A DNA stretch of 64,000 nt from Podarcis erhardii (Eukaryota), in NCBI GenBank assembly GCA_964252035.1, contig OZ176201.1; one strand, written 5' to 3'. Below the pieces are notes generated by a model. It saw only the letters and a list, made by a program, of their open reading frames with translations, was not told the origin of the DNA and made no database searches. Positions 496 to 59,830 of the stretch are shown one piece after another. Within the stretch, counting starts at the first letter, position 1; each line of letters opens with the position of its first letter. A program made the position numbers and the translations under genes.

Positions 496-1698
496 TTACT
501 TTGATTTTCCTCCAACTGCACCCAATGCTTGCTCTTGTTCTGTCGGTGGTGTTGGTATCACTTTCACTGGAGAGTCCAGTCCAAAAGATAGTGTTGCTAT
601 GTCCACTATTGGTGATCTTCTATCCAATACTTTTTGCTCTAGTCCTCTATCTGGTGATCTTCTGTCCGATGCTCCTGGCTCTTTTCCAAGTTCCTTCTGC
701 AGATCTCCTTCGTAGTTACTCAAAAACTTTTCTTTATCCTCAACTGATCTTATTTTTATTTTCCTTCCTTTGAAGCTGAAGGATAGGCCTTGGGGGAATT
801 CCCACCTAAAGAAGATTTTGTTCCTTCTCAGCAGGGCAACCAGATCTCCATAATTGGACCTAAGGTCCAAAAGATGTTTTGGGATATCTTTGAATATTTC
901 CACTCTTGACTGCTGTATTACCAAGGTCTTCTGATAGTGCCAACCCAAAATTTTATCTCTCTCTTCTTTAGATCGAAGTGTAATCAAACAGTCTCTCACT
1001 CTATTCTTCTTCCCTCCTCTTCCAAGTCTAAAGGCACTCACAATTTTAAATTCTTCTTGTTCCAAGTCCAAATCCCAAAACTCTGCAAATTCCTGCGTGA
1101 GAAAGTCTATCAAACTATCCTTCTCCAATTCCGGTACAGCTCTGATCCTCAAATTCGTCTGTTTTTCCTTAAGCTCAAACATAGAAAGCATCAACTTGTG
1201 GTCCTCAAGTTGCCTCTGTAGATCTGGGACTCTCTTTGTTTCCAATTGTGTTACCTTGACTTCCACGGCAGCAACTTTTTCCCTGGCTTCCTCTGCGGTC
1301 TGTCGGGTCAAAGTAGATTCCTGTATCAATTTCTGAATGCTTTCTATGTTGGTATTCACCTTTTGTCCCAAATTATTTATACTTTCTGTATTTAAATCGA
1401 TTTTAGTATTTGCAGCATCCACCTTCGCATTTGTCGCATCCACCTTCGCATTTGTCGCATCCACTTTCACATTTGTTGCATCAATCTTCTTATTGAGTTG
1501 CTCCAAAGATTCATTTATCTTACCTAATGCAATCGCTAGAGCTTCTTCTGATGGCATTCCTCTTAGTTTAGATTGCGTTCGTACAGCTGCAGGCAAGGCA
1601 GAAGGACCAGATGCTGACGCTCTTCACTGCCAAGACTTCCCAGATCTTGTTGTTTTGTCTGGGAGTGACGAATCTACTTTTTCTTTCCCATCTGCCAT
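496..1698 (-). pseudogene. L1 ORF1p (coiled coil + RRM + CTD), about 400 codons with one in-frame TGA at codon 25
   Basis: The 366-aa track ORF starts at TTG. An in-frame ATG in good Kozak context (GTTATGG) lies at 1698, 34 codons upstream, with one TGA at 1624-1626 between them. Motifs: heptad coiled coil, NLRIRAVPE, FKDIP, FRWEFPQGL. Confidence 0.85.
1394..1488. repeat. 21-bp tandem repeat encoding ORF1 heptads (KVDATNA)n
   Basis: GCATCCACCTTCGCATTTGTC is identical at 1415-1435 and 1436-1456, diverged at 1457-1477, with degenerate units on both sides. Confidence 0.92.
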
Positions 1699-25616: not shown

Positions 25617-25975
25617 ATATAATGAGAAGAACATCCTTCTTTGGTGTCACTTCTATAAGGTGTTGTAAGTCTTCATAGAATTGGTCAATTTCAGTTTCTT
25701 CAGCACCAGTAGTTGGTGCATAAACATGGATTACTGTGATGCTAAAAGGTCTGCCTTGGTTCGTGTCGAGATCATTCTATCATTTTTGAGATTGCATCCC
25801 AGTACAGCTTTCGCCACTCTTTTGTTGAGTATGAGGGCCACTCCATTTTTTTAACGGGATTCTTGCCCACAACATGAGTTTGACCAAACTGTGGGAGGCA
25901 GTGGAAGACAGGAGTGCCTAGCGTGCTCTGGTCCATGGGGTCATGAAGAGTCGGACATGACTAAACAACAACAAC
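25617..25975. mobile_element. BovB (RTE) insertion: inverted endonuclease fragment (25617-25871, minus) fused to the 3' tail (25872-25975, plus)
   Basis: Minus translation CGQES..KNGVALILNKRVAKAVLGCNLKNDRMIS..QGRPFSITVI.VYAPTTGAEETEIDQFYEDLQHLIEVTPKKDVLLII. Plus-strand tail GGGAGGCAGTGGAAGACAGG...GAGTCGGACATGACTAAACAACAAC. 13-bp TSD ATTATTATT(A/G)TCC. Confidence 0.9.
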
Positions 25976-27309
25976 ATTATTATTGTCCAGTCGGTCATTT
26001 ACACTTTCTTCATGTTTGAGCTGTTTGAGCTGCAGATGTAACCAGGCTTGATAACTTGACATATAATTAGCAGCCCTTTGAAACCCTCTTGGTAACATGA
26101 GGAATTGCATGGTAGGAAACTGACAAAAATCAGGAAACACTATAAATTACCCAGAGCATTGCAGAAATGTTTGTGTGGTGTTGATTTAACTGGCCACAAA
26201 TTTAAACCCACCCATTTAAACAAGAAGAGAGGTTTTCAACACTCCTCTATTTCATTCTCACTGTGCTTGACAATGACACCATAGAAATAGCAGCAAAAGT
26301 GTGAGTGTCATTGAACACTGTAAAACCTTCTCAGTGTATCAGCTGTGGAAACACCTATGTTAAACAATTTTGTATTATCTTGTAAAAAGTGCATTCAGTA
26401 GCCTTTAGACTTCCTTAACTTTTCTAAGGCAGCAGAATTTATTCAGCTGATCACTTTGGCTTCAGATGAGAACTTGTTTAAGTTTATGAAATGTGGAATA
26501 TGTTATTTGGGAACTGTGTGGATTACTAGAGCAAAATAAGCTGTTTTTCAGTTTATGCCAAGTGTGTTTGCAGAATCAGCTGAATAAGTGTAGTGTGTAT
26601 TGATTATTGTGATCGCTGCTGTCATCTATGAAAGAAAGATACTGCAGTCCTATAGATAAGATAATCGGTACTGAAATAAAACATTATGTATAAAACTAAT
26701 GGGACAGCACCATCCTGTATAGATCATAAGGATAAGTCTCACTACGAAGTATGTATAAAGCTTTTAGGACTCTTAGGTATGGGTAAATATCCTCTAATTC
26801 TACCTGCCACCTTTGCCCCTTTCATGCTTTGACACAGCTTGATAGACCAGTCCAAAACCTTCATGTTGAATACAAATCACTAAAAAGACTTGTGGCATCT
26901 TTCATGGACTAGAGCCAATGCAAACCACTTTTATTATATATTAAAGTGTGGGGTTTGTGAGAGAGGGAGAGAGAGTGAGGGGCAGGTGGAGGGCACACAG
27001 AGAGGTACTATTTAATTCTTCTGTTTGGGAGGATACTACCAATAACAAAAATTCTCTGAGTGGTTTACAAATGAAAACAAACAAGCAACAAAAATTCTAA
27101 CTGCAAATGAATATATATCTACTCTGATCAACCTCATTTAGAGTTGTTGGCATCTATCTACTAAAGAGACAATGGAGTGCACTTCCAGAGGTGAAATCAA
27201 ACTGCTGTGTTAGCTGAGGCAGTGTGTATGCAGGTTCTGAGGTGCTCAACGACAAGACCCTGTTCTCAGCCTCATGGATTTGGTCCAAAGAAAAGAAAAG
27301 TAATAGTTT

Positions 27310-34577: not shown

Positions 34578-34810
34578 CTCACTGGCAGCGGAGCAGCCTT
34601 CAAGAGCCTTCTTGCTGCACCCTTCTGTTGGATAACATAACAAGCCTACTTCCAGAGCTAGTCTGCTGCACTCAGGTGCAGTGGAAAACATTATCCCTCT
34701 TGCAGTATGTAAAGGAGGTGCTACTTTGTCCGTGTTCACCTCAGGCCACACAATGTCTTGAGCTGGCCCAGATCATGTTTTGAGGAAAGAAGAAATAATG
34801 TATGATTTAA
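34578..34810. repeat. Unclassified interspersed repeat, copy A
   Basis: Shares colinear blocks with 41537-41771, e.g. TGAGCTGGCCCAGATCATGTTTTGAGGAAA and CATAACAAGCCTAC. Confidence 0.8.
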
Positions 34811-34823
34811 GATTTAGTCTTCT

Positions 34824-34933
34824 AGTTTGACCAAACTAGTTTGCGGGAGGCAGTGGAAGACAGGAGTGCCTGGCCTGCTCTGGTCCATGGCATCACGAAG
34901 AGTCGGACACAACTAAACGACTAAACAACAACA
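34824..34933 (+). mobile_element. BovB extreme 3' tail
   Basis: AGTTTGACCAAACT...GGGAGGCAGTGGAAGACAGGAGTGCCTGG...GAGTCGGACACAACTAAACGACTAAACAACAACA; approximate TSD AAGATT(T)A(G)TCTTC. Confidence 0.9.
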
Positions 34934-34939
34934 AAGATT

Positions 34940-35035
34940 ATCTTCCATAAACACTGTTTTAACAGTGAGTCCGTAAGTGACTCTGGAGGCCAATTCTGGA
35001 TCCACACGTCCTTATACAGTGGGGATATCGGTTTT
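34940..35035 (-). mobile_element. 3' end fragment of a second RTE-type LINE
   Basis: TTTAACAGTGAGTCCGTAAGTGACTCTGGAGGCCAATTCTGGATCCACACGTCC recalled as an antisense lacertid RTE 3' end; not verified. Confidence 0.45.
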
Positions 35036-36227
35036 TTAGCATGACTATATTTAGTACTAGTCATGCTAACTTGGAAGTAAACCCCCATTCAACTCCGTGG
35101 GACTACCTCTTTAGTTAACATACCTGCCACTGAGCATCAGCCCTTCCCCTGAGTCAGGATAGCAAAGCCATCTTCACAGAGCATCTTTCAAGTGTGTTGG
35201 TTTTCTTACAAAATAGTATTCCTTTGCAGTTATGTGTAGGTTCCCAAGTTGTGCCAAAATTGAACATCTGTAGAGTTACCCAAATAAATAAATATTTCAA
35301 ATGGGAGTCTCCAAGTTTCTGAGTCTAATAACTTTGTAACTTCTGTGAAAGAACTTCCAGTAGTCTTGAACTATATCAAAGAACTAAGAAAGTGATACAT
35401 AGCTCTGAGCCCAAACCTTGAGGGATTTATCTATCATTCATAACAATACAGAATAACATTTGAAGCTCCTGAGGAAATGGTTCTGCACTCAATAGTTTTT
35501 AACTCCATGCTCACATTCAGAAAACTTAGTTCTGGAGAAAAGTCATTATTTAGTGTTACTATTTTTTTTCTTCATTTAGGCCATATAAGTGCCAGGATTG
35601 TCATTATAGATGTCGGGAGAGGGAGAACCAGATTATAGCAAATTTTTTACTATAATTATGAAGTTTGATTAAAGGAAGAAAAACAAGAAACTGATTGAAG
35701 CCAAAGTTGATAGATTTGTCCATCCCTACAGATCAACTGTAAAATTTTGAGAAATGCTTATTTCCAGGACAGTTGTGGCAAAATGACTTCAGAAACCCAT
35801 TGAAGAGCTTAACTATCCAAAAAAACTAAGCTGTTATTTCTCAGCTAAAGCCTGCCCTACCTCTGACTATCTTATGTGACTATTTAGCCTTCATTTATCT
35901 ATTTTTGTCAGTTTGTATACAACCTGTCCACCTTTGCTTTATAGCATAAGAAATCTTTCAAGAATTTTTGTACATTGTGATAAAGACAGAATATTTTTAG
36001 TTTAAAAGAAGCCAACTGATAGGATGTGGTGAATTTTTTAAATATAAAAATATAGGTTTGTGTGGAAAGAGCTCAAGATAAATTTCTTTCGTACTTTCAG
36101 AACACTAGAGGTTTGGACTCATCCAATGAAAATGACAGAAAGTTCAAGACAAAAAGTAAAGTATTACTTCATGCAGAACAAAGTTAACTTAACATGAAGG
36201 TGCTATAATGACTACCAGCTAAGATGG

Positions 36228-36880: not shown

Positions 36881-37990
36881 ACCTAAAACCCTTGGCACCT
36901 CATGAAAAGAGGGACAATGAGTAGGAGGGCTCAAAGGCTTTGTGGATATCAGAGAAAGTCCTCATGGTTGCCACTGCACTCAGAGGCACTGAGGTGTTTC
37001 TTATAGTCAATCTAGAAGAGAAAATAGGGAAGGGGGTTGAGGCATGAGTTCCTAGAAAGCGCTTGTTAAGCATTACATCCAATCAACTTCTTTGGTAGTG
37101 GAAAAATGCATTTCTTATTTTAGAAAGCTGAGCTCTAAAAGCTTTGATATGCTATATAATTCAGAAATCAGGGAGGGTTCTTGTGAATGCCCAAGCACAA
37201 GGGCTCTTATTGCCTTTCAAGCAGCAGTTATAGCAGGTTCAGATGAAGGCAAATGAAGCCAAGGCCTGTTTGGAAGATAATAAGCCACCTAAAGCATTTT
37301 TTTTGTTGTACAAATGCATGTATGTGGTTTGATTTGAGCCACCAAACAGTATGCCATCATCATTAATTTGAAATATTAAAAGCATGTAAATGAGGTTTTG
37401 AAAATGACTCTGCTCTCAATCTCACCCAGGTCTCTCTTGGACTAGTGCCCAGAAAGCAGTGTTGGATCAATGACAGGAAGCAAGTCATCTCTTAAAGTGT
37501 TTTCTTGTTGAGTTGGGCTTCTCATAGCATCATGCCAAAATACTGGGAAACAGGGTCGTGCATTCCCACACTGAGGGGTTGCCCCATTGTCAGGGCCACC
37601 CTGCTGTTTTCTAGTGGTACCCTGTCCAAGTTATTTTTAATGGCTACAACAAGCAACCAGCTTTCAAATTTTAATCATGTGTATGTTCTACTATAGGGAA
37701 GGGCATGTTTCTCTTGGATAATTATACTTAGTATTCTACTGACATTGCGGTTACCGTATTGCAACCTGGAGGTGTTGTGTTTTCATTTAAAAGTTAATTA
37801 CTGGCCTGGTTCTCACACCATGCTAAGCTAGGTGAGGGGAACTTGTGGACCTCCAAATGCTACTGAAGTACAGCTGCCAACATGGCCAATAGCCAGGGAT
37901 TGCACCCTAATAGGCAAATAAAGAGGCAGACACATTAGAAGGGGTTGAACTTTTTTTTAGACCTTAAATTGAAATCAACAGAAGGGCAGG

Positions 37991-38029
37991 ACTATGGGGC
38001 AGGAACTAACTATGGGGCAGGAACTAACT
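37991..38029. repeat. 18-bp tandem duplication
   Basis: ACTATGGGGCAGGAACTA twice, perfect. Confidence 0.95.
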
Positions 38030-38363
38030 TAACTGTATAACTGTAGCCATTGGGCAACCCACCCTTGCCTAAGGAATTAGGGCATGGCTTCTTAGCCTGC
38101 CCAGATTCCCAGGCCACACCCTGAAGGTGAGAAGGGAGGTCTTACCTTGCCACCCCCCCCCCCCAGGACTGCAGAACCCCAGGTGGATGAGGGAGTTTGG
38201 CTTCAAAGGAGGCCCCTATATCACCCTCTGAACCGCAGAGTCTGAGAAATGAGCCTCGGGGCCGGCCCATCATCTGAAAGGTACCCAAAGGGCGTCACCA
38301 GGCTAAACCAAACTATTTCTTTCCCCACACCTAAAATGCCACTGAAAGGGGACAAATCTCTAT

Positions 38364-38950
38364 TTAGTCCCCTTTCCCCATCCCTGAGAGGCACTGTTGC
38401 AGCCCCCTCTGCAGGTTGGATAGAAAGATGTTATTTTCAGCATCCGTTACATGGACTCCATCTGGCTTATACAGTTCAACCCCATCTGCCACGATACCTT
38501 CATGGCGGATTACTTGACCTCCTAGGCTCTCAACTGCAAGCCGAACTTCCCTGTTGACTTTTCTCCTTGTCCTGTTTATTCCCCTTGGATCCCAAGAAAC
38601 CTGTCATACCCTTCTAGGCAGTATTTCGGACCAAACTAATGTAACCGCTGGCCAACGTTGCTGGATAACCTTAAAATCCAAAATGGCTTACAGGCTCAGA
38701 GCCTTTCCTTTCAGCAAACCCAGATCACTGACACCCAGGTGGACCACCAGCACCTGGGAAGGCTCAGGCATTGCAGGCATTGGAACAGCAAAGGGAGCAA
38801 CCGGTCCCAATGCATGCCTCGGCGGCCCAACCACTAAACTGATGCCAACTGGATCAACCCTAGTTGTGTGCCAAACTTGGAAGCAGCAGCCCTCCAACTG
38901 GCTCCCAACACCATGGTGTGGCCGCAGATAAGTACCCTGGACAGCTCTCT
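38364..38950 (-). pseudogene. SGNH/GDSL-type hydrolase (esterase) domain, decayed
   Basis: Two-frame minus translation: RVLICGHTM (block I), WLGRRGMHWD (block II), frameshift, VVHLGVSDLG (block III), LVWSEILPRR, LYKPDGVHVT (block V), then LQRGLQQ. Stops at 38834-36, 38688-90, 38604-06; terminal TAA at 38364-66. Confidence 0.82.
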
Positions 38951-41536
38951 CCAGATTTAGGCACCTGCCAAAATAAAACATAGTCAGCAACACATTTCAA
39001 GCACTAAGGCTACCCTTGCCCCTTAGCAGCCACACCTGCCTCCTGTGTGTGATCAAGCCCTTCCCACTCACTCAGACCACCTAAGAAATGAACCAGTCGG
39101 TGCAGGGAATTTACCTGCTCTGCCTTTCTTGCCCAACAGCTCACAAAGGCGTCCAGCCTTCTGAGCACTATCTAGGCCTTTTGGATGAATGTTCTAATGG
39201 TACTTGTAGTTCAGTAATATCTCAAGAGCCAAAGATGCACTAAGACAACAACTGTGTGGCTCCCCCAGCTGACATGTGGAAGGTGATAGAGCCACAGATT
39301 CTCCTGCCCTGTTTCTTCATCAAACACTTTGCTCCCCTTCTGTTTCCTATATAAAGTGCAGGCAGGAAGGGAGGGAGCAGAACACCAGAGCACCTCACCA
39401 AAGAAGCTGCAAGTACATTGCAATTTTTGAAGGTTCAACTAGGCAACCCTAACTGGTATTACCATTGCTGGCTCCCGCCTCCATAGCCACCCTGCTCCTG
39501 TGTCTTTAACAACAGCCCAAATACACAGCAGTTAAGCAAATGAAGCTTTTCCTGACATCTAGAAAAAAAATGGGGGGGGGCAGGAGTTTTGCCAATTTCA
39601 TTTTTCATATTTTTCTCCTTTAAGAAAAATAAGAAACCAATCCAAATTTATTTGAATAGATTTCCCTTGGAAGGATATCCTTTATTATCTCTGTCTAAAT
39701 TGCTCAGCTTTCTGATGTTTTAAAAGGCTGCAAGTATCACAGCAGCTTTAAAATATACAGTTGAATATGATCTATCTAGAGCTACTCATGAACAAACCAT
39801 AATCAACAAGAGTTGCTTTCAAGCGGGTATGTTGCATTTGCATGTTCACCCCTCCCCTGAAGCTATGATGATGCATACAGACTTCTGACAAAGGGTGCAG
39901 AATTGACAATGATGACATTATCAATTAAGACTTTAAGCAAATAAACAATTTCATTTGTTTTTCCATCTCCTTTGATAATCATGGCTATATTGACCCAACT
40001 TACTAGTCTAAAATCCCATGTAATTACAGCATTGTCTCTGCTGAGCTTGTTTTCAAATTAATTGCAGTCAATGTGGTGGCAAATTAATTGTGGGAAATCA
40101 TTAGCAATAAATCGCAAGGTGCACAAACTCTTTGAAGCATTGTTCTGTTCCTCTTTCCAGAGCTTCGGTGGCCATCAGACACAGGCAGTTAATAGCAACA
40201 CCTGAAGTCTTAATTGGACTCTAATTGTGCTCCTATTTGACCAGGGAAATTATGCCTCTCTTAAGCACATATCATTTACACAACCTTGCAGTGATATCCT
40301 TCCAGAGGCAATGGGTCTGGAAGGCTGTTGTTGCTGTGCTAGGTTTCAGTGGTTGTCATTTTGACATATTATTTTGTGCTTTTCTTCAGAAGACAGAAGT
40401 TGATTGAATGTGAGAAAAGTGGGACTTTGACAAGCTGTCAGAAGCCCTTGCAGTGCAAACTTACCTGCCAGCTACCTTGTTTCAGATTTCTTTCAAAGAA
40501 GCTTTCCAGTGCACCAGCTTCTATTACTAATCCAAGAAGCTCTAAAATCAGGAGCTCCCTATTTTGAAAAGGCCAAATTAAATAATTTACACTTCAAATT
40601 GTTTTAAATCCCAAGGATAGAAATACCTGATAGAGCAAAAAACCAAGGGTGGATTTTGGAGATATGTATGCCCTCCAGTCACCCTGGCAAGTCTGTGCTA
40701 ATGCAAAGTTAGTTGGTGTTTCATTCCTGCCATCTCCCTCTTTTGTTTTTATTATTTCAGTGAATGTGGGGGGGGGGGGTTCCCCCCTTCAATTCCTGGA
40801 AAACCTTGTGAAATTCAAAAAAGAAAAGAAAAGAAAAGGCAGCCATGAATTGGTCAAGGAAAGGAAATATGAATAGAAATAAGCTGATTTAAAAGAAAGA
40901 CCATCTTCTTGGTTTATAGTGTTTTATTATAATAAAATCTGATCTTCAGAGCTATGGGGCTTTGTTTTATAAAAAAAACTTTAAATATGCTTTATTTTCT
41001 TCAGATGTGATTGTTTTGCTTTTCCTTCTTCAACATAGCTAGGCTTTTTCATACATCAATGGCTATTTACTACTCCATCTGTGATAGATAGATATGTTTA
41101 GGATTTCAGACATATTTTATTGGTGCTTTTGACAGCTTTCTTAAACTTAGAAATTAAGCAAATCATCTCATGGAAATACATCACCGGGAAAGGTTTAATT
41201 TGCTTAATGTTTGCAAATGTATAGCTTTCTTCTCAGGCAAAATGGAAACCAAATAAGATATGATAAATCTAGTGAAATTTCAGGGGTAAATAATGAGTGG
41301 AATCTGCACATCCATAGATAGTCACCATACTTTGGTTAAAGCAGAATTTGAAGCAAAAGTGCTAGCTTCTGAGGAGCATTACACTTTTACTATCACAATA
41401 AAATAAAAGCATGAAGATAAGAACTTCACTTTTTCATAATCGTCAGGGCCAACACTACAATTAGGCCAAATGGGGCAACTATCCCAGGCTGCAGCGAAAC
41501 TGCAGCAACTAATGTGGGGGCAAAGGAGAAAGCCCT

Positions 41537-41771
41537 CTCACTGCCTTCGAGAGCCTTCTTGCTGTACCCTTCTGTTGGAGGGCATAACAAGCCTACCTCC
41601 ATAGCCAGCCTACTGCACTTTGGTGCAGTGGAAGACACTATTCCACTGTCAGTAAAGAAATTAGATTCAACTCCCAGTCCAGTCCAGTCCTTGTCCTTCA
41701 TCTCAGGCCACGAACATCATGAGCTGGCCCAGATCATGTTTTGAGGAAATAATAAATAATGTGTGATTTAA
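41537..41771. repeat. Unclassified interspersed repeat, copy B
   Basis: Colinear with 34578-34810, same orientation. Confidence 0.8.
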
Positions 41772-41948
41772 AACTCCGGTGCTGTTCACACTTTACTTGG
41801 AAGTAAAGACCATTCAACTCAGTGGGACATACCTTTTTGGTAAACATGTTTAGGATTGTATGAGTGTATAATCTAGAAAAGCACCAGGAAAGCGACAGTG
41901 AATTCAGGGTGATTCAAAGTGGAACATTCCGTCTCAATACAATGCATT

Positions 41949-47475: not shown

Positions 47476-47763
47476 TGTTTTCTTTTGCACACACAGTTTT
47501 CTTCATAAGTATAATATATCCTTTAAAAAAGAGAGAAATAGGCTTAATAATGTAGGTTATACTGTATCTTTTTAATATTTATGGGAGCCTGATCTGCTTT
47601 TGTTAGTTATAGATCTGCACTCTTCAGTTCAGATGTAGAAAGCAAATTCAGCCAGAGATAAAGAGTATAATGATATGACCAGTTACTCTCATTGATCAGT
47701 GGATTGCCAAGTGCTTTGCGATGCTAAAGCAAATGTCAATACTATACAGCAAAACATAAGTAC

Positions 47764-47963
47764 NNNNNNNNNNNNNNNNNNNNNNNNNNNNNNNNNNNNN
47801 NNNNNNNNNNNNNNNNNNNNNNNNNNNNNNNNNNNNNNNNNNNNNNNNNNNNNNNNNNNNNNNNNNNNNNNNNNNNNNNNNNNNNNNNNNNNNNNNNNNN
47901 NNNNNNNNNNNNNNNNNNNNNNNNNNNNNNNNNNNNNNNNNNNNNNNNNNNNNNNNNNNNNNN
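47764..47963. other. Assembly gap (200 N)
   Basis: Run of N; true length and contiguity across it are unknown. Confidence 1.
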
Positions 47964-51651: not shown

Positions 51652-54521
51652 ATCTGGTATGAAGGTTGTGGACCACAGAGACATCTCAGTCATAGTATTT
51701 TGAAGTGATAGCGACCGTGTTACATGTGGGTCACAATGGGGTTAGAAAACAATGTTGAAAAGCCCTGAAACTAGAAAGCTGAAATGTGGCTTTAAAAGAA
51801 CACACACACTGGAAAAAAAGGAAATCCTGAAGGTCTGAATGAAAGCAAGCTGATGGAGGAATCAAAATTACTGTACATTATGGCATTAGTAACTAAAGGC
51901 TGCAATCATATACACACACCCAGGAAGGGGACGGACAGAATGCCTAGGAGCTAGCAAAGCTGATCTGTTTGCCTCAGTGATAACAACACAAAAGACAATC
52001 TTTGTATAATATATTTCCAAATATTTATGGCAGAGACAAATCCACAGTAGAACATGCATTCATTTGTCTTTTTTTTTTTTGCTTCAAAGCTCCCTCTCCT
52101 TAGGTATAATCTCATCATCAGTGGAAGAGCTTTGGTCTGAAATATGCTTTGGTCTCTTAAAATACAGTAATCAGAGGTGATCAGTGGTTGGTACAATTAA
52201 TACAAAGTAACAGGTTGCTCAACTCTGTTTGATTCACAGAATGTACTACTTTGACATGCAAAAGTATGAAAACATTATAAAGTATAATTTAGTCCTGGAG
52301 ACGTGATTTTTGTCAACAAAAGGCAATACCAGAATAACAATGTCTGTAACAGTTCTGTTCATGACACTTATAACTTAGAGGAGTAGCAATTTGGAAGGAG
52401 CCATTTTTCAAGCCTAAATATGCAGTGCAACCTTGTCCTGGGCTTGCAGATAATTTCAAGAAGTCACTGAAAATGATTGTCTATTAAAGGGTGAGACCTC
52501 TGGTATTTCCTAGTCGCTAGAAATCATCATATATTAGAATGGAAAGACCTCTGGTATTTCCAGGTGTCAAAGTCCCAATTTAAGGGAAATGAGAGATTTT
52601 ATGTAAAAACAAAAACAAATAGAGGCTGATACTTTGTTGTGGCCAGGATAATGGGATTAGAAAAAAGAAAAGATCAAGGATCGTTTAGTGATTTTCTTAT
52701 TCTACTTCTGGTTCTGGTATTTTTTAAGAGAGAAAGAGAGAATAGTGAAATAAGGATATTAGGAATAGTGAAGCACAGGAAGGACTACAGAGTATATTCA
52801 GCCTGGAATAATTCAGCTTTATCTAGAGATGGAAGGAAAATAGCAGAAAATTCAGATGATTTAATTAAAGAAGTTTAATAATGCAGACTTTTCAACAGCT
52901 GGCATTCCTGTGCATCTTTCTCAAAGAACATATTCTGATTACACAGAACTGATCCAAATTCTCCCCTTCTAAATTTAGAACTTATTTGAACCACTACTTT
53001 TAGAACCTAAATTTTTTAGCCCATTCACTTGAATGTCTCAGTGAGTGTTGTCTTTGCAGTGTAGGACAAGATTTGTGTGGATTATGAATAGTCTGTTTGT
53101 GCATAGTTGTATCATTGTTGCACCACACCATGGGTACCAATTGCCTTCCCTTCTACTTTACTGGTGTAGTCCTCTATATTTCCTGTGCAAGGAAAAAGGT
53201 GATTGGGGTCCTGCAAAGGAGCCATGAGGAATGTTTTTAGAAACTGAGCAGAGGTGCTCATTGTCTTCCTTTATTGTACTAACACACTTCTGCTTCCGAC
53301 CTGATCTATAATGTGAAAATGCTTATATTGTTGATTGGGTGAGGTATCAAGCCTCTTCTCCTTCACCATCCTTCTTTGAAAATTGATGCTGCATATCAAG
53401 ACTTATGTCTGGGATCATGGAACTGAACTACAGCTCCCATCTTCCCAAGCAAAAAATGCCAATGTCAAGTCCTGGTAGGGATGGTGGGACTTGTAGTTCT
53501 CTCATTGAGTAAGATGTTTGTCTTCATTGGTATTGAAAACAGCATGGAAAAGGAGGAAGTGCTGTCCTTTCTTTGCCAAATCCATCACTAGAGCCACCAT
53601 TACTTGCTCCCCCATTTTGAACTTCCTTCTTGGGGACCACTGCAGGGTGGTATGTGGGAATAGGTCTCCAGTGAGCATTCTTTCCAGTACATGGCAGGTT
53701 TCACTTGAGTGGGGCCTGATTCGTATACAGGGTGAGTAGCCTTCTTTATGTAAGCGTGAAAAATCTCTGAGCCATGGGTCATTCCTGTGATCCTTCAGGT
53801 CCCTCTGTTAGGCCCTAAGGATGCTTTCACAGGCCATGCCCCACACTGTCCCTTCCTCAGGTGCTTTTGCCTGGCTGGAATGTGCCCTTAAACTGTGATA
53901 ATGCCTTTTGCTTGGCGGGATGAAGGATGGAAGATTTGTGGCTGCATGGGTATGCCTTTTACATGGATGGAATGTGCAAAGACTTTAACCCATTGGTCTG
54001 CTCAGTTCTGTTTCTGCCCTGCCAACAATGGTCATGTGGTTCTCAGATGGTTCCTTATGAAGGAATGTGCCCAAGGTTAAGTGATGGTGTTGTGTTGGTT
54101 CATTGTCTCAACCAGTGTGTTGGCAGGAGATAGGAGTCCAGTTCCACCATTACTGAGGCAGCTCACCCTAAGTAAGGGTCTACCTGGCCTGTCACATCTT
54201 GTTCTGTATAGTTAGAGTGGTGCTACCCTAAATAGGTACTTGTATGCTGGAGGTATCATCCTTTCAGGTCCCAAGTTCCTTGTCATCCCATTTCTACTTC
54301 AAGGTATTGATTCAGTCTCAACATACTTTCAGGTGAGAATCATACAGACTTTTATGAGTATTAGTTGCACACTCTCCTGCAGCAGAATCACTCAGTCCTC
54401 TTGCCTTCTCTGTGTTCTCATTGGGAAAACAAGACATGCACTCAAGGATGTGTTTGGCCAATCCCATCTTATTTTCTGCTTGACTTTTCAGGGTGGCATG
54501 CCACCCAAGCAGTGAGGAACC

Positions 54522-58884: not shown

Positions 58885-59140
58885 TCTAATATCATTTGAT
58901 ATTAACTTTTTAATATGAATATTGTTTTTAATGCTGTAGCCCATCCTGGGATCTTATGGTGAAGGGCAGGTAATAAACAAAATAAGATGATGATACTTTC
59001 CATAGGGATTGTAGCTGGGAATGGAAAGTTTAACCCCTCTATGAAAACGCTGTGGTCCAATGGAAATTGCTCACCCTTGTGTCTGGGATTCATTTTTAAA
59101 ATAATTTTGCATGGCTGCAGTTAATGAATGTGTAATTCAT

Positions 59141-59830
59141 CTTGAGAGCAGTACATGTGAAAAGGATCTAGGAGTCTTGGTTGACCACAAACTTGACATG
59201 AGCCAACAGTGTGATGCGGCAGCTAAAAAAGCCAATGCAATTTTGGGCTGCATCAATAGGAGTATAGCATCTAGATCAAGGGAAGTAATAGTGCCACTGT
59301 ATTCTGCTCTGGTCAGACCTCACCTGGGGTACTGTGTCCAGTTCTGGGCACCACAGTTCAAGAAGGACACTGAGAAACTGGAACGTGTCCAGAGGAGGGC
59401 AACCAAAATGGTCAAAGGCCTGGAAACGATGCCTTATGAGGAATGGCTAAGGGAGCTGGGCATGTTTAGCCTGGAGAAGAGGAGGTTAAGGGGTGATATG
59501 ATAGCCATGTTCAAATATATAAAAGGATGTCACATAGAGGAGGGAGAAAGGTTGTTTTCTGCTGCTCCAGAGAAGCGGACACGGAGCAATGGTTCCAAAC
59601 TACAAGAAAAAAGATTCCACCTAAACATTAGGAGGAACTTCCTGACAGTGAGAGCTGTTCGACAGTGGAATTTGCTGCCAAGGAGTGTGGTGGAGTCTCC
59701 TTCTTTGGAGGTCTTTAAGCAGAGGCTTGACGACCATATGTCAGGAGTACTCTGATGGTGTTTCCTGCTTGGCAGGGGGTTGGACTCGATGGCCCTTGTG
59801 GTCTCTTCCAACTCTATGATTCTATGATTC
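59141..59830 (+). mobile_element. Young 5'-truncated CR1 LINE with an uninterrupted ORF2 C-terminus
   Basis: Open frame EKDLGVLVD...ANAILGCI...[15 protein letters not shown]...[10 protein letters not shown]...RRLRGDMI...FKQRLD; (ATTCTATG)n tail. Confidence 0.97.

What the first reader, a model, noticed from the sequence alone, without database searches (positions are those of the whole stretch)
38364..38950. Hidden SGNH-hydrolase (esterase) pseudo-ORF with no recognisable RT or recombinase beside it
Seen: joining two minus-strand frames gives about 190 codons carrying all four SGNH blocks in order and at plausible spacing: ICGHT, GRRGMHW, HLGVSD and DGVH. There are three internal stops (one base away from CAG, CAA and TGG), one frameshift near 38745-38790, and apparent substitutions at the nucleophile (GHS to GHT) and oxyanion Asn (GGND to GVSD). 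Established: SGNH esterase domains occur as accessory cargo in ORF1 of some CR1/L2/RTEX LINEs and as an extra 3' ORF in some vertebrate Ngaro tyrosine-recombinase retrotransposons. Inference: this is a Ngaro-type hydrolase. I see no RT/RNaseH/YR upstream, so it is either a truncated element or a non-autonomous, hydrolase-only derivative. The role of this enzyme in mobility is not established.
Basis: partly seen in the sequence, partly recalled or inferred. Interest (0 to 1): 0.72.

Follow-up and report, generated by a model that had tools for sequence, protein, structure and literature searches.

The report
Decayed retroelement esterase gene fragment
This is a long-dead, broken copy of the accessory esterase gene carried by tyrosine-recombinase (Ngaro-type) jumping genes of lizards, lying in a 1.3-kb insert that lacks the element's replication genes; it is a genomic fossil of a known kind.

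Summary
On the minus strand, 38995-38364 reads in two frames as a complete SGNH/GDSL esterase domain of about 190 codons. All four blocks are present in order. There are three in-frame stops and one frameshift, and the nucleophile and oxyanion-Asn positions are altered.

A search with the C-terminal 79 codons alone found 216 relatives. The N-terminal pieces, in the other frame, align colinearly to the same proteins.

The closest relatives (50-58% identity) are multi-copy "uncharacterized" lizard proteins. In those species the same loci, or single reading frames, also encode a tyrosine recombinase (YR).

The window holds no YR, RT or split direct repeats. Contigs of four related species show that 39196-37901 is one 1296-bp insertion into a palindromic lizard repeat. 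The esterase ORF is followed by its native, highly repeated 3' region.

So this is a hydrolase-only remnant or derivative. It is old, being orthologous in several species, and shows no sign of constraint.

It is a new member of a known kind, of modest interest. Other first-stage notes on this genome report YR elements with esterase ORFs elsewhere.

The parts
38364..38995 (-). Esterase (SGNH/GDSL) pseudo-ORF. Frame A is 38995-38780 and frame B is 38762-38367, with the terminal stop at 38366-38364.
38915..38929 (-). Block I, ICGHT. The nucleophile position holds Thr where relatives have Ser.
38807..38827 (-). Block II, GRRGMHW. The oxyanion Gly is kept.
38724..38741 (-). Block III, HLGVSD. Relatives have GGND here.
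38451..38462 (-). Block V, DGVH. The Asp-x-x-His motif is kept.
38834..38836 (-). In-frame stop 1 (TAG)
38756..38780 (-). Interval that holds the single frameshift between frames A and B
38688..38690 (-). In-frame stop 2 (TAA)
38604..38606 (-). In-frame stop 3 (TGA)
38344..38376 (.). Imperfect inverted repeat (about 9-bp stem) that straddles the ORF's terminal stop, just before the common 5' border of the repeated 3' region
   Evidence: sequence
37901..38341 (-). Non-coding 3' region (R3) of the insert. Summed contig depth is 10-25 times the single-copy level at >=80% likeness in four species. It holds an 18-nt tandem duplication at 37991-38026. Paralogues carry it joined to the 3' part of the ORF.
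   Evidence: (tables 2, 5, 7, 8)
38996..39196 (-). 5' part of the insert, with no secure coding similarity. 39051-39196 is present in a few other contigs. There is a weak hint of the family's N-terminal 'RL-AL' motif near 39171-39076.
39197..39234 (-). Left half of the interrupted palindromic lizard repeat S (the target of the insertion)
   Evidence: (tables 5c, 7)
37837..37900 (-). Right half of the interrupted repeat S

Best explanation
The stretch is a decayed copy of the accessory SGNH esterase gene that tyrosine-recombinase retroelements of the Ngaro type carry downstream of their recombinase gene.

It lies on the minus strand inside a single 1296-bp insertion (39196-37901) that split a copy of an abundant palindromic lizard repeat. 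The insert holds three parts: about 200 bp of unassigned 5' sequence, the esterase ORF, and that ORF's own non-coding 3' region. It holds no gag, RT/RNase H or recombinase.

It is therefore a hydrolase-only remnant or non-autonomous derivative that could only have moved with proteins supplied by full-length elements.

The copy is dead. It has three stops, one frameshift and altered nucleophile and oxyanion positions. It is shared at the same place by related species and evolves no more slowly than its flanks.

In intact relatives the protein is inferred to be a Ser-His-Asp esterase. By analogy with the solved LINE esterase it may act on lipids or membranes. Its role in mobility is unknown.
For: Shown:
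- The domain is real and complete.
- The family's nearest solved structure is the ZfL2-1 retrotransposon esterase 4c1b, at E 7.8e-10. PAF acetylhydrolase follows at 2e-3.
- The closest relatives are multi-copy squamate proteins: Rhineura 54-58%, Hemicordylus 50%.
- Hemicordylus LOC128347973 gives esterase isoform P0004 and YR isoform P0182, with the first 123 residues identical. The same holds for P0194/P0231 and for Pogona P0201/P0227.
- The Phrynocephalus protein P0046, frog P0094 (five near-identical proteins in its cluster), Haliotis P0124 and others have the YR C-terminus followed directly by the esterase.
- In a quick ML tree the window sequence sits in a squamate clade in which YR-linked members are scattered, apart from the TSG101 clade.
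- Contigs of four species show uninterrupted copies of repeat S joining 37900 to 39197/39205. They also show single-copy depth over 38642-39043 and a high-copy 3' region with its border at 37900. Several paralogues carry that 3' region joined to the ORF's 3' part (joints 38384>38489 in all four runs; 38361>38449 and 38308>38451).
- The window holds an intact S copy at 53422-53499.
- The locus is present in organisms A-F. Contigs of B and F span the ORF and its flanks with about 1-3% differences. These are not fewer inside the ORF than outside it (tables 3, 8).

From the literature: Ngaro-like elements of Xenopus have a fourth ORF with an SGNH hydrolase after the YR (10.1101/2021.08.05.455354; PMC6681497).
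Against: - No RT/RNase H was seen linked to the esterase or YR in any lizard protein, so a retroelement nature is inferred, not shown.
- The insert has no split direct repeats and no trace of YR, although in relatives the YR ends a few codons before the esterase.
- The 5' 200 bp is unexplained.
- The single joint that suggests a short ORF-less form (38338>39051) rests on one contig of one species, with 41 letters on its shorter side.
- Contigs show presence only. The copy number of the ORF part cannot be judged below 80% likeness.
Confidence: 0.7

Rival explanations
1. It is the ORF1 esterase of a CR1/L2-clade LINE whose ORF2 has been lost.
For: The nearest solved structure is the ZfL2-1 ORF1p esterase. 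That protein also has an N-terminal coiled coil followed by a C-terminal esterase (PMC3905857), like the lizard proteins. An unchecked first-stage note reports a CR1 ORF1 esterase elsewhere in this genome. CR1 remains exist in the window at 59111-59755.
Against: The match to 4c1b is distant and only at profile level. Direct relatives at 35-58% identity are YR-linked. No EN/RT follows the ORF: its stop is followed within 25 nt by a non-coding high-copy region that ends the insert. None of the 150 relatives carried LINE domains in the scans made.
Confidence: 0.07
2. It is what is left of a full-length YR element after later deletions, not a unit that inserted as hydrolase-only.
For: Old elements commonly lose parts. 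The 5' 200 bp has no assigned identity. The ORF part has no close paralogues, so no 'family' of such units is shown.
Against: Both ends of the 1296-bp insert abut the two halves of one interrupted repeat S, with at most 2 bp duplicated. A later deletion would therefore have had to lie wholly inside the insert. 39051-39196 occurs in a few other contigs.
Confidence: 0.3
3. The parent element is a YR DNA transposon (Crypton-like) carrying an esterase, not a retrotransposon.
For: Only YR and esterase linkage is shown. No RT was seen in any related protein.
Against: The described elements with YR followed by an SGNH ORF are Ngaro-like retrotransposons with gag and RT/RH. Unchecked first-stage notes on this genome describe gag+RT+YR+esterase copies. 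ORFs of such elements are separate, so protein models would not show RT.
Confidence: 0.1
4. It is a pseudogene or retrocopy of a host SGNH gene, for example the conserved SGNH-like exon of TSG101 isoform X2 or PAF-AH Ib.
For: TSG101 isoform X2 of lizards and mammals carries a related domain.
Against: The TSG101 domains form their own fully supported clade away from the window sequence. PAF-AH is only a distant profile match. The nearest relatives are multi-copy within genomes.
Confidence: 0.03

Closest known systems
Ngaro-like YR retrotransposons with a fourth ORF (for example DIRS-53_XT and DIRS-54_XT of Xenopus; Goodwin & Poulter 2004, as cited in 10.1101/2021.08.05.455354)
   Same: The SGNH hydrolase is encoded after the tyrosine recombinase. 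Frog members of the family found here (P0094, P0029, P0113) show exactly that order. Degenerate copies lacking YR, RT or hydrolase are described in X. laevis.
   Different: The window copy has no gag, RT/RH, YR or split direct repeats. RT linkage is not shown for the lizard lineage. Lizard gene models join a shared N-terminal module to either the YR or the esterase, and I did not find this described.
ZfL2-1 ORF1p esterase (PDB 4c1b; PMC3905857)
   Same: It has the SGNH fold with the same four blocks and is the best solved-structure match of the family profile (E 7.8e-10). It has a C-terminal esterase behind an N-terminal oligomerising part. It is an active esterase that binds negatively charged liposomes, which is the basis for the inferred activity.
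   Different: It belongs to a LINE whose ORF2 follows, and the sequence relation is distant. The window ORF is followed by a non-coding end and its close relatives are YR-linked.
HAL1 ('half-L1') ORF1-only non-autonomous elements of mammals (from my own knowledge, not checked here)
   Same: It is a derivative that keeps only an accessory ORF plus element ends and depends on proteins made in trans.
   Different: It is a different element class. For the window copy, a family of such units is not demonstrated.
PAF acetylhydrolase Ib catalytic subunits (PDB 1wab, 1es9)
   Same: They are SGNH hydrolases and the next-best solved relatives (E about 2e-3).
   Different: They are host enzymes and far more distant.

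Membership tests
SGNH/GDSL hydrolase superfamily | Blocks I, II, III and V in order and at family spacing | tested here: met
   The alignment to 13 relatives and a 214.7-bit match to the family-domain HMM over positions 5-193. Relatives hit PF13472. The profile hits SGNH structures.
SGNH/GDSL hydrolase superfamily | Catalytic Ser in block I, Gly in block II, Asn in block III and Asp-x-x-His in block V | tested here: not met
   The window has Thr for Ser and Ser for Asn. Gly and Asp-x-x-His are kept. Relatives keep all of them, so the window copy is an inactive member by descent.
SGNH/GDSL hydrolase superfamily | Direct Pfam hit of the window's own translation | tested here: inconclusive
   Five pieces of 25-79 aa gave no hit at E<=10. 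The pieces are too short, and a read-through by reference is not accepted by the tool.
Ngaro-type YR retrotransposon | Tyrosine recombinase ORF upstream of the hydrolase | tested here: not met
   Not in the window. HMMs of mollusc/frog YR, of 28 squamate YRs and of the YR C-terminus tested against shuffles all found nothing. The feature is met in relatives' loci.
Ngaro-type YR retrotransposon | RT/RNase H ORF | tested here: not met
   No long ORF or related match anywhere near. It was also not seen in related proteins.
Ngaro-type YR retrotransposon | Split direct repeats A1 ... B1-A2-B2 | tested here: not met
   A self-comparison of 37780-39330 at word size 7 found no direct repeat above chance. 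Paralogues of the 3' region are about 80-85% alike, so repeats of an intact unit should still be visible.
Ngaro-type YR retrotransposon | Insertion without target-site duplication | tested here: inconclusive
   At most 2 bp (AT) is duplicated at the junctions with repeat S. CR1/L2 insertions can also lack duplications (my own knowledge).
CR1/L2 LINE ORF1 esterase | ORF2 with endonuclease and RT downstream of the esterase ORF | tested here: not met
   The stop at 38364 is followed by a 441-bp non-coding repeat that ends the insert at 37901. There is no ORF of 60 aa or more on this strand.

The most novel reading that the evidence does not exclude
The 1.3-kb insert may be a member of a hydrolase-only non-autonomous lineage. 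Such a lineage would arise from the sub-genomic, spliced esterase message of a lizard YR retroelement (N-terminal module joined to the esterase exon plus the 3' end) and be copied back into the genome and moved in trans. This would imply that these elements express the recombinase and the esterase from one shared 5' exon by alternative splicing, a retrovirus-like expression strategy not described for the DIRS order.
Probability: 0.12. Interest if true: 0.6.

Novelty: new member of a known kind. Interest (0 to 1): 0.3.

Why it matters
On its own it is a neutral fossil. Its value is as a dated marker: the insertion is shared by several related lizard species. It shows that YR elements with an esterase ORF were active in the lacertid lineage, and that pieces carrying only the esterase and the element's 3' end exist.

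The work around it gave two leads of more interest:
- Lizard gene models in which one N-terminal module is joined either to the recombinase or to the esterase.
- A strongly conserved esterase-like domain of the same family used as an alternative C-terminus of TSG101 in reptiles and mammals.

The role of the esterase in retroelement mobility remains an open question. Intact lizard relatives such as P0185 or P0004 would be suitable for assay.

Tried and rejected
- Pfam on the five ORF pieces gave no hits.
- The word-index protein search with the 79-aa piece found no candidates, because of its length window.
- The ESM Atlas gave only weak GDSL leads, at 0.90.
- Rfam and tRNA scans of 37700-39400 found nothing, so the 3' repeat shows no tRNA, 7SL or 5S head.
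- YR remnants upstream: three HMM searches were negative. A by-eye likeness of 39120-39000 to a YR C-terminus was no better than shuffles (262 of 300 shuffles scored as high).
- An HMM of the N-terminal module found nothing over the whole window. A motif-level test gave only a weak hint, with 5 of 400 shuffles as good.
- No split direct repeats lie inside the insert.
- The direct repeats at 34596-35121 and 41543-41847 (77-85% alike) were considered as possible outer repeats of a larger element. I rejected this: they are copies of an interspersed repeat with another insertion inside, there is no coding remnant between them, and the geometry is wrong.
- Splice-site-like motifs (a donor-like site at 39114 and an acceptor-like site ending at 38965) do not fit one reading frame, so I make no claim from them.
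- A search of the scan's findings by sequence for the 3' repeat came back blank, which means nothing on this genome.
- The careful ML tree did not finish, so the quick tree was used.
Read-throughs used X at every break.

Full report
**The observation**

The window is vertebrate DNA of about 40% G+C with lizard-type repeats. These include an L1 ORF1-like ORF at 496-1596 and a CR1 ORF2 tail at 59111-59755.

On the minus strand, two frames carry a complete SGNH domain:
- Frame A (38995-38780) reads ICGHT at 38929-38915 and GRRGMHW at 38827-38807.
- Frame B (38762-38367) reads HLGVSD at 38741-38724 and DGVH at 38462-38451.
- The ORF ends at the stop 38366-38364.
- In-frame stops lie at 38836-38834, 38690-38688 and 38606-38604.
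- The frame changes between 38780 and 38756.

The five pieces between the breaks are too short for Pfam. The length-limited word search found nothing.

phmmer with only the last 79 codons against 1.84 billion representatives found 216 proteins at E<=1e-3, the best at 1.9e-13. When the best 150 were laid back on the window with tblastn, they matched frame B at 45-56% identity, running through the stops. Their residues just upstream matched frame A colinearly, for example P0005 55-120 followed by 129-247. Frame A was not part of the query, so this is an independent check.

Read through with X at each break, the sequence scores 214.7 bits against an HMM of the family's domain. It aligns block for block with relatives. 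The family has GHS, G-RG, GGND and DGVH. The window has Thr at the nucleophile and Val-Ser in place of Gly-Asn.

**What the family is**

All ten relatives first scanned hit PF13472 Lipase_GDSL_2 below threshold. Closer lizard relatives pass the threshold. A profile of 36 relatives finds the ZfL2-1 retrotransposon ORF1p esterase, PDB 4c1b, as by far the best solved relative (E 7.8e-10). PAF acetylhydrolases follow at about 2e-3. The family therefore belongs to the transposon branch of SGNH esterases.

The nearest proteins are 'uncharacterized protein LOC...' models of squamates: Rhineura, Hemicordylus, Elgaria, Eublepharis, Anolis, Pogona, Erythrolamprus and Heteronotia. There are several near-identical loci per genome. 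Some are fused in gene models to unrelated host genes such as ZNF318-like, DUSP12, PRP39 and VGLL4. This is the signature of a mobile element. The best identities to the window are 54-58% for Rhineura and 50% for Hemicordylus.

**LINE or tyrosine-recombinase element?**

Several independent lines link the family to a tyrosine recombinase (YR):

1. YR and esterase occur in one reading frame. Seven of the representative hits share an N-terminal part that is a YR with the usual catalytic landmarks. In Haliotis P0124 and in the agamid lizard Phrynocephalus P0046 the recombinase C-terminus is followed within a few residues by the esterase. Frog P0094, with five near-identical proteins in its cluster, shows a Phage_integrase C-terminus at residues 5-62 directly before the esterase.

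2. One locus gives both proteins. In Hemicordylus, LOC128347973 gives isoform X2 (P0004, esterase) and isoform X1 (P0182). P0182 has the same first 123 residues, then Phage_int_SAM_1 and Phage_integrase at 28 bits, above Pfam's cut-off. The same pattern holds for LOC128328362 (P0194 and P0231) and for Pogona (P0201 and P0227).

3. The shared N-terminal module also occurs in the window's nearest relative. The module is a basic start, an acidic Ser-rich patch and two 'RL-ALE' motifs. It is present in P0185 and resembles that of other YR proteins.

4. Contig lengths suggest adjacency. Logan contigs of 1694 nt and 4660 nt are recorded as the longest contig for both an esterase and a YR protein. 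This suggests that the two genes are adjacent but does not prove it.

5. The tree agrees. In a quick ML tree of 144 domains the window sequence lies in a squamate clade (SH-aLRT 93) in which YR-linked members are scattered.

The literature describes exactly this arrangement for Ngaro-like elements: gag-like, RT/RH and YR ORFs plus a fourth ORF with an SGNH hydrolase.

The ZfL2-1 protein has an N-terminal coiled coil and a C-terminal esterase, so architecture alone would not separate the two origins. The YR linkage and the absence of an ORF2 do separate them.

What I could not show is RT. No related protein carried an RT or RNase H domain. A retroelement nature therefore rests on the literature and on unchecked notes of this scan that describe gag+RT+YR+esterase copies elsewhere in this genome.

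**The surroundings in the window**

None of the 150 relatives matches anything else in the 64 kb. HMMs of the recombinase found no trace upstream. They were built from molluscs and frogs, from 28 squamate proteins, and from the C-terminus alone with shuffled controls. An HMM of the N-terminal module was also negative. A motif-level test gave only a weak hint near 39171-39076, with 5 of 400 shuffles as good.

Contigs of four runs from four related organisms, laid at >=80% likeness, give the anatomy:
- 38642-39043 is single copy.
- 37838-38373 carries 10-25 times the single-copy depth, with a sharp border at 37900 and variable flanks beyond it.
- 39044-39311 carries 4-6 times the single-copy depth, with a border at 39234.
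- Several contigs join 37900 directly to 39197/39205. The loose ends before 39197 read like 37871-37900.

The last point identifies uninterrupted copies of a short palindromic repeat, S. An intact S copy lies in the window at 53422-53499 and reads straight across the junction.

Hence 39196-37901, which is 1296 bp, is an insertion into S, with at most 2 bp duplicated. On the minus strand it consists of:
- about 200 bp of unassigned sequence;
- the esterase ORF;
- a small hairpin across the stop codon;
- a 441-bp non-coding region that is highly repeated.

Paralogues in all four species carry this 3' region joined to the 3' part of the ORF (joint 38384>38489). Two more such joints occur in one species. 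The 3' region is therefore the ORF's native 3' flank and not a chance neighbour. One contig joins 38338 to 39051, which would be a short form without the ORF, but the support is thin.

There are no split direct repeats in the insert. The 3' repeat shows no tRNA-like or other known RNA head.

**Age and state**

The stretch is found in six organism labels, with the share of sampled 31-mers falling from 0.97 to 0.25. Contigs of organisms B and F span the ORF and both flanks with about 1% and 3% differences. The listed differences are at least as dense inside the ORF as outside it. The insertion therefore predates these species and drifts neutrally. It has no function to explain.

The mechanism inferred for intact relatives is that of a Ser-His-Asp esterase, by homology to the active, liposome-binding ZfL2-1 esterase. 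This is inference.

**Verdict**

Membership in Ngaro proper fails for this copy on YR, RT and repeats, and RT is untested for the lineage. Whether the unit inserted as hydrolase-only or lost the rest afterwards stays open. The clean insertion borders favour hydrolase-only insertion. The lack of detectable sister copies of the ORF part argues for caution.

It is a new, dead member of a known kind.

**Side observations**

- TSG101 'isoform X2' models of lizards, a gecko, echidna and manatee consist of the UEV domain, the proline-rich linker and an esterase-like domain of this family (38% identity to P0004). That domain is 71-78% identical between reptile and mammals. It keeps GHS and GGND but has Leu in place of the block V His. 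It looks like an old domesticated copy. A full-text search for the two terms together found nothing relevant.
- The alternative joining of one N-terminal module to the recombinase or to the esterase in lizard gene models suggests splicing-based expression of the two proteins. A full-text search for the terms Ngaro, hydrolase and splic- listed nothing that appeared to address this, judged from titles and abstracts only.

Noticed in passing
proteins P0206, P0209, P0213-P0220 (not in the window): TSG101 'isoform X2' models of lacertids, geckos, echidna and manatee consist of the UEV domain, the Pro-rich linker and an SGNH-like domain of this transposon family. That domain is 71-78% identical between lizard and mammals. 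It keeps GHS and GGND but has Leu for the block V His. It forms its own fully supported clade. It looks like an ancient domesticated esterase domain used as an alternative C-terminus of an ESCRT-I protein.
   Followed up: partly
proteins P0004/P0182, P0194/P0231, P0201/P0227, P0167/P0235: In lizard gene models one N-terminal module (basic start, acidic Ser-rich patch, two 'RL-ALE' motifs) is joined either to a full tyrosine recombinase or to the esterase at the same locus. This suggests alternative splicing from a shared 5' exon.
   Followed up: partly
window 38344-38376: An imperfect hairpin (about 9-bp stem) straddles the esterase stop codon, immediately before the common 5' border (about 38341) of the high-copy 3' region.
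   Followed up: no
window 39197-39234 + 37837-37900, and 53422-53499: Copies of a short palindromic repeat with 'ACTACAAGT-CCA ... TGGGAGCTGTAGT'-type arms. It appears to be common in the contigs of the related species. One copy is split by the 1296-bp insert.
   Followed up: partly
window 34596-35121 and 41543-41847; also 25877-25976: Two copies, 77-85% alike, of an interspersed repeat of about 300 bp. One is interrupted by a piece that recurs at 25877-25976. They are not related to the esterase insert.
   Followed up: partly
window 496-1596 (-): An intact 366-aa ORF with a coiled-coil repeat region, looking like an L1-type ORF1 protein. It was not analysed further.
   Followed up: no
window 59111-59755 (+): A 214-aa ORF that looks like the C-terminal part of a CR1-type ORF2.
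   Followed up: no
window 38965-38980 and 39109-39117 (-): An acceptor-like pyrimidine tract plus CAG lies about 14 codons before the GH(S/T) motif. This is the same distance at which Hemicordylus isoforms switch exons. A donor-like CAG|GTAAAT lies upstream. The two do not fit one reading frame now, so no claim is made.
   Followed up: partly
proteins P0003, P0006, P0008, P0106 and others: Proteins of 1900-3100 aa showing several (up to 12) separate matches to the esterase piece, suggesting tandem copies of this domain. Neither their organism nor their domain content was checked.
   Followed up: no
window about 47750-47950: A run of 200 N (gap or masked), left untouched.
   Followed up: no
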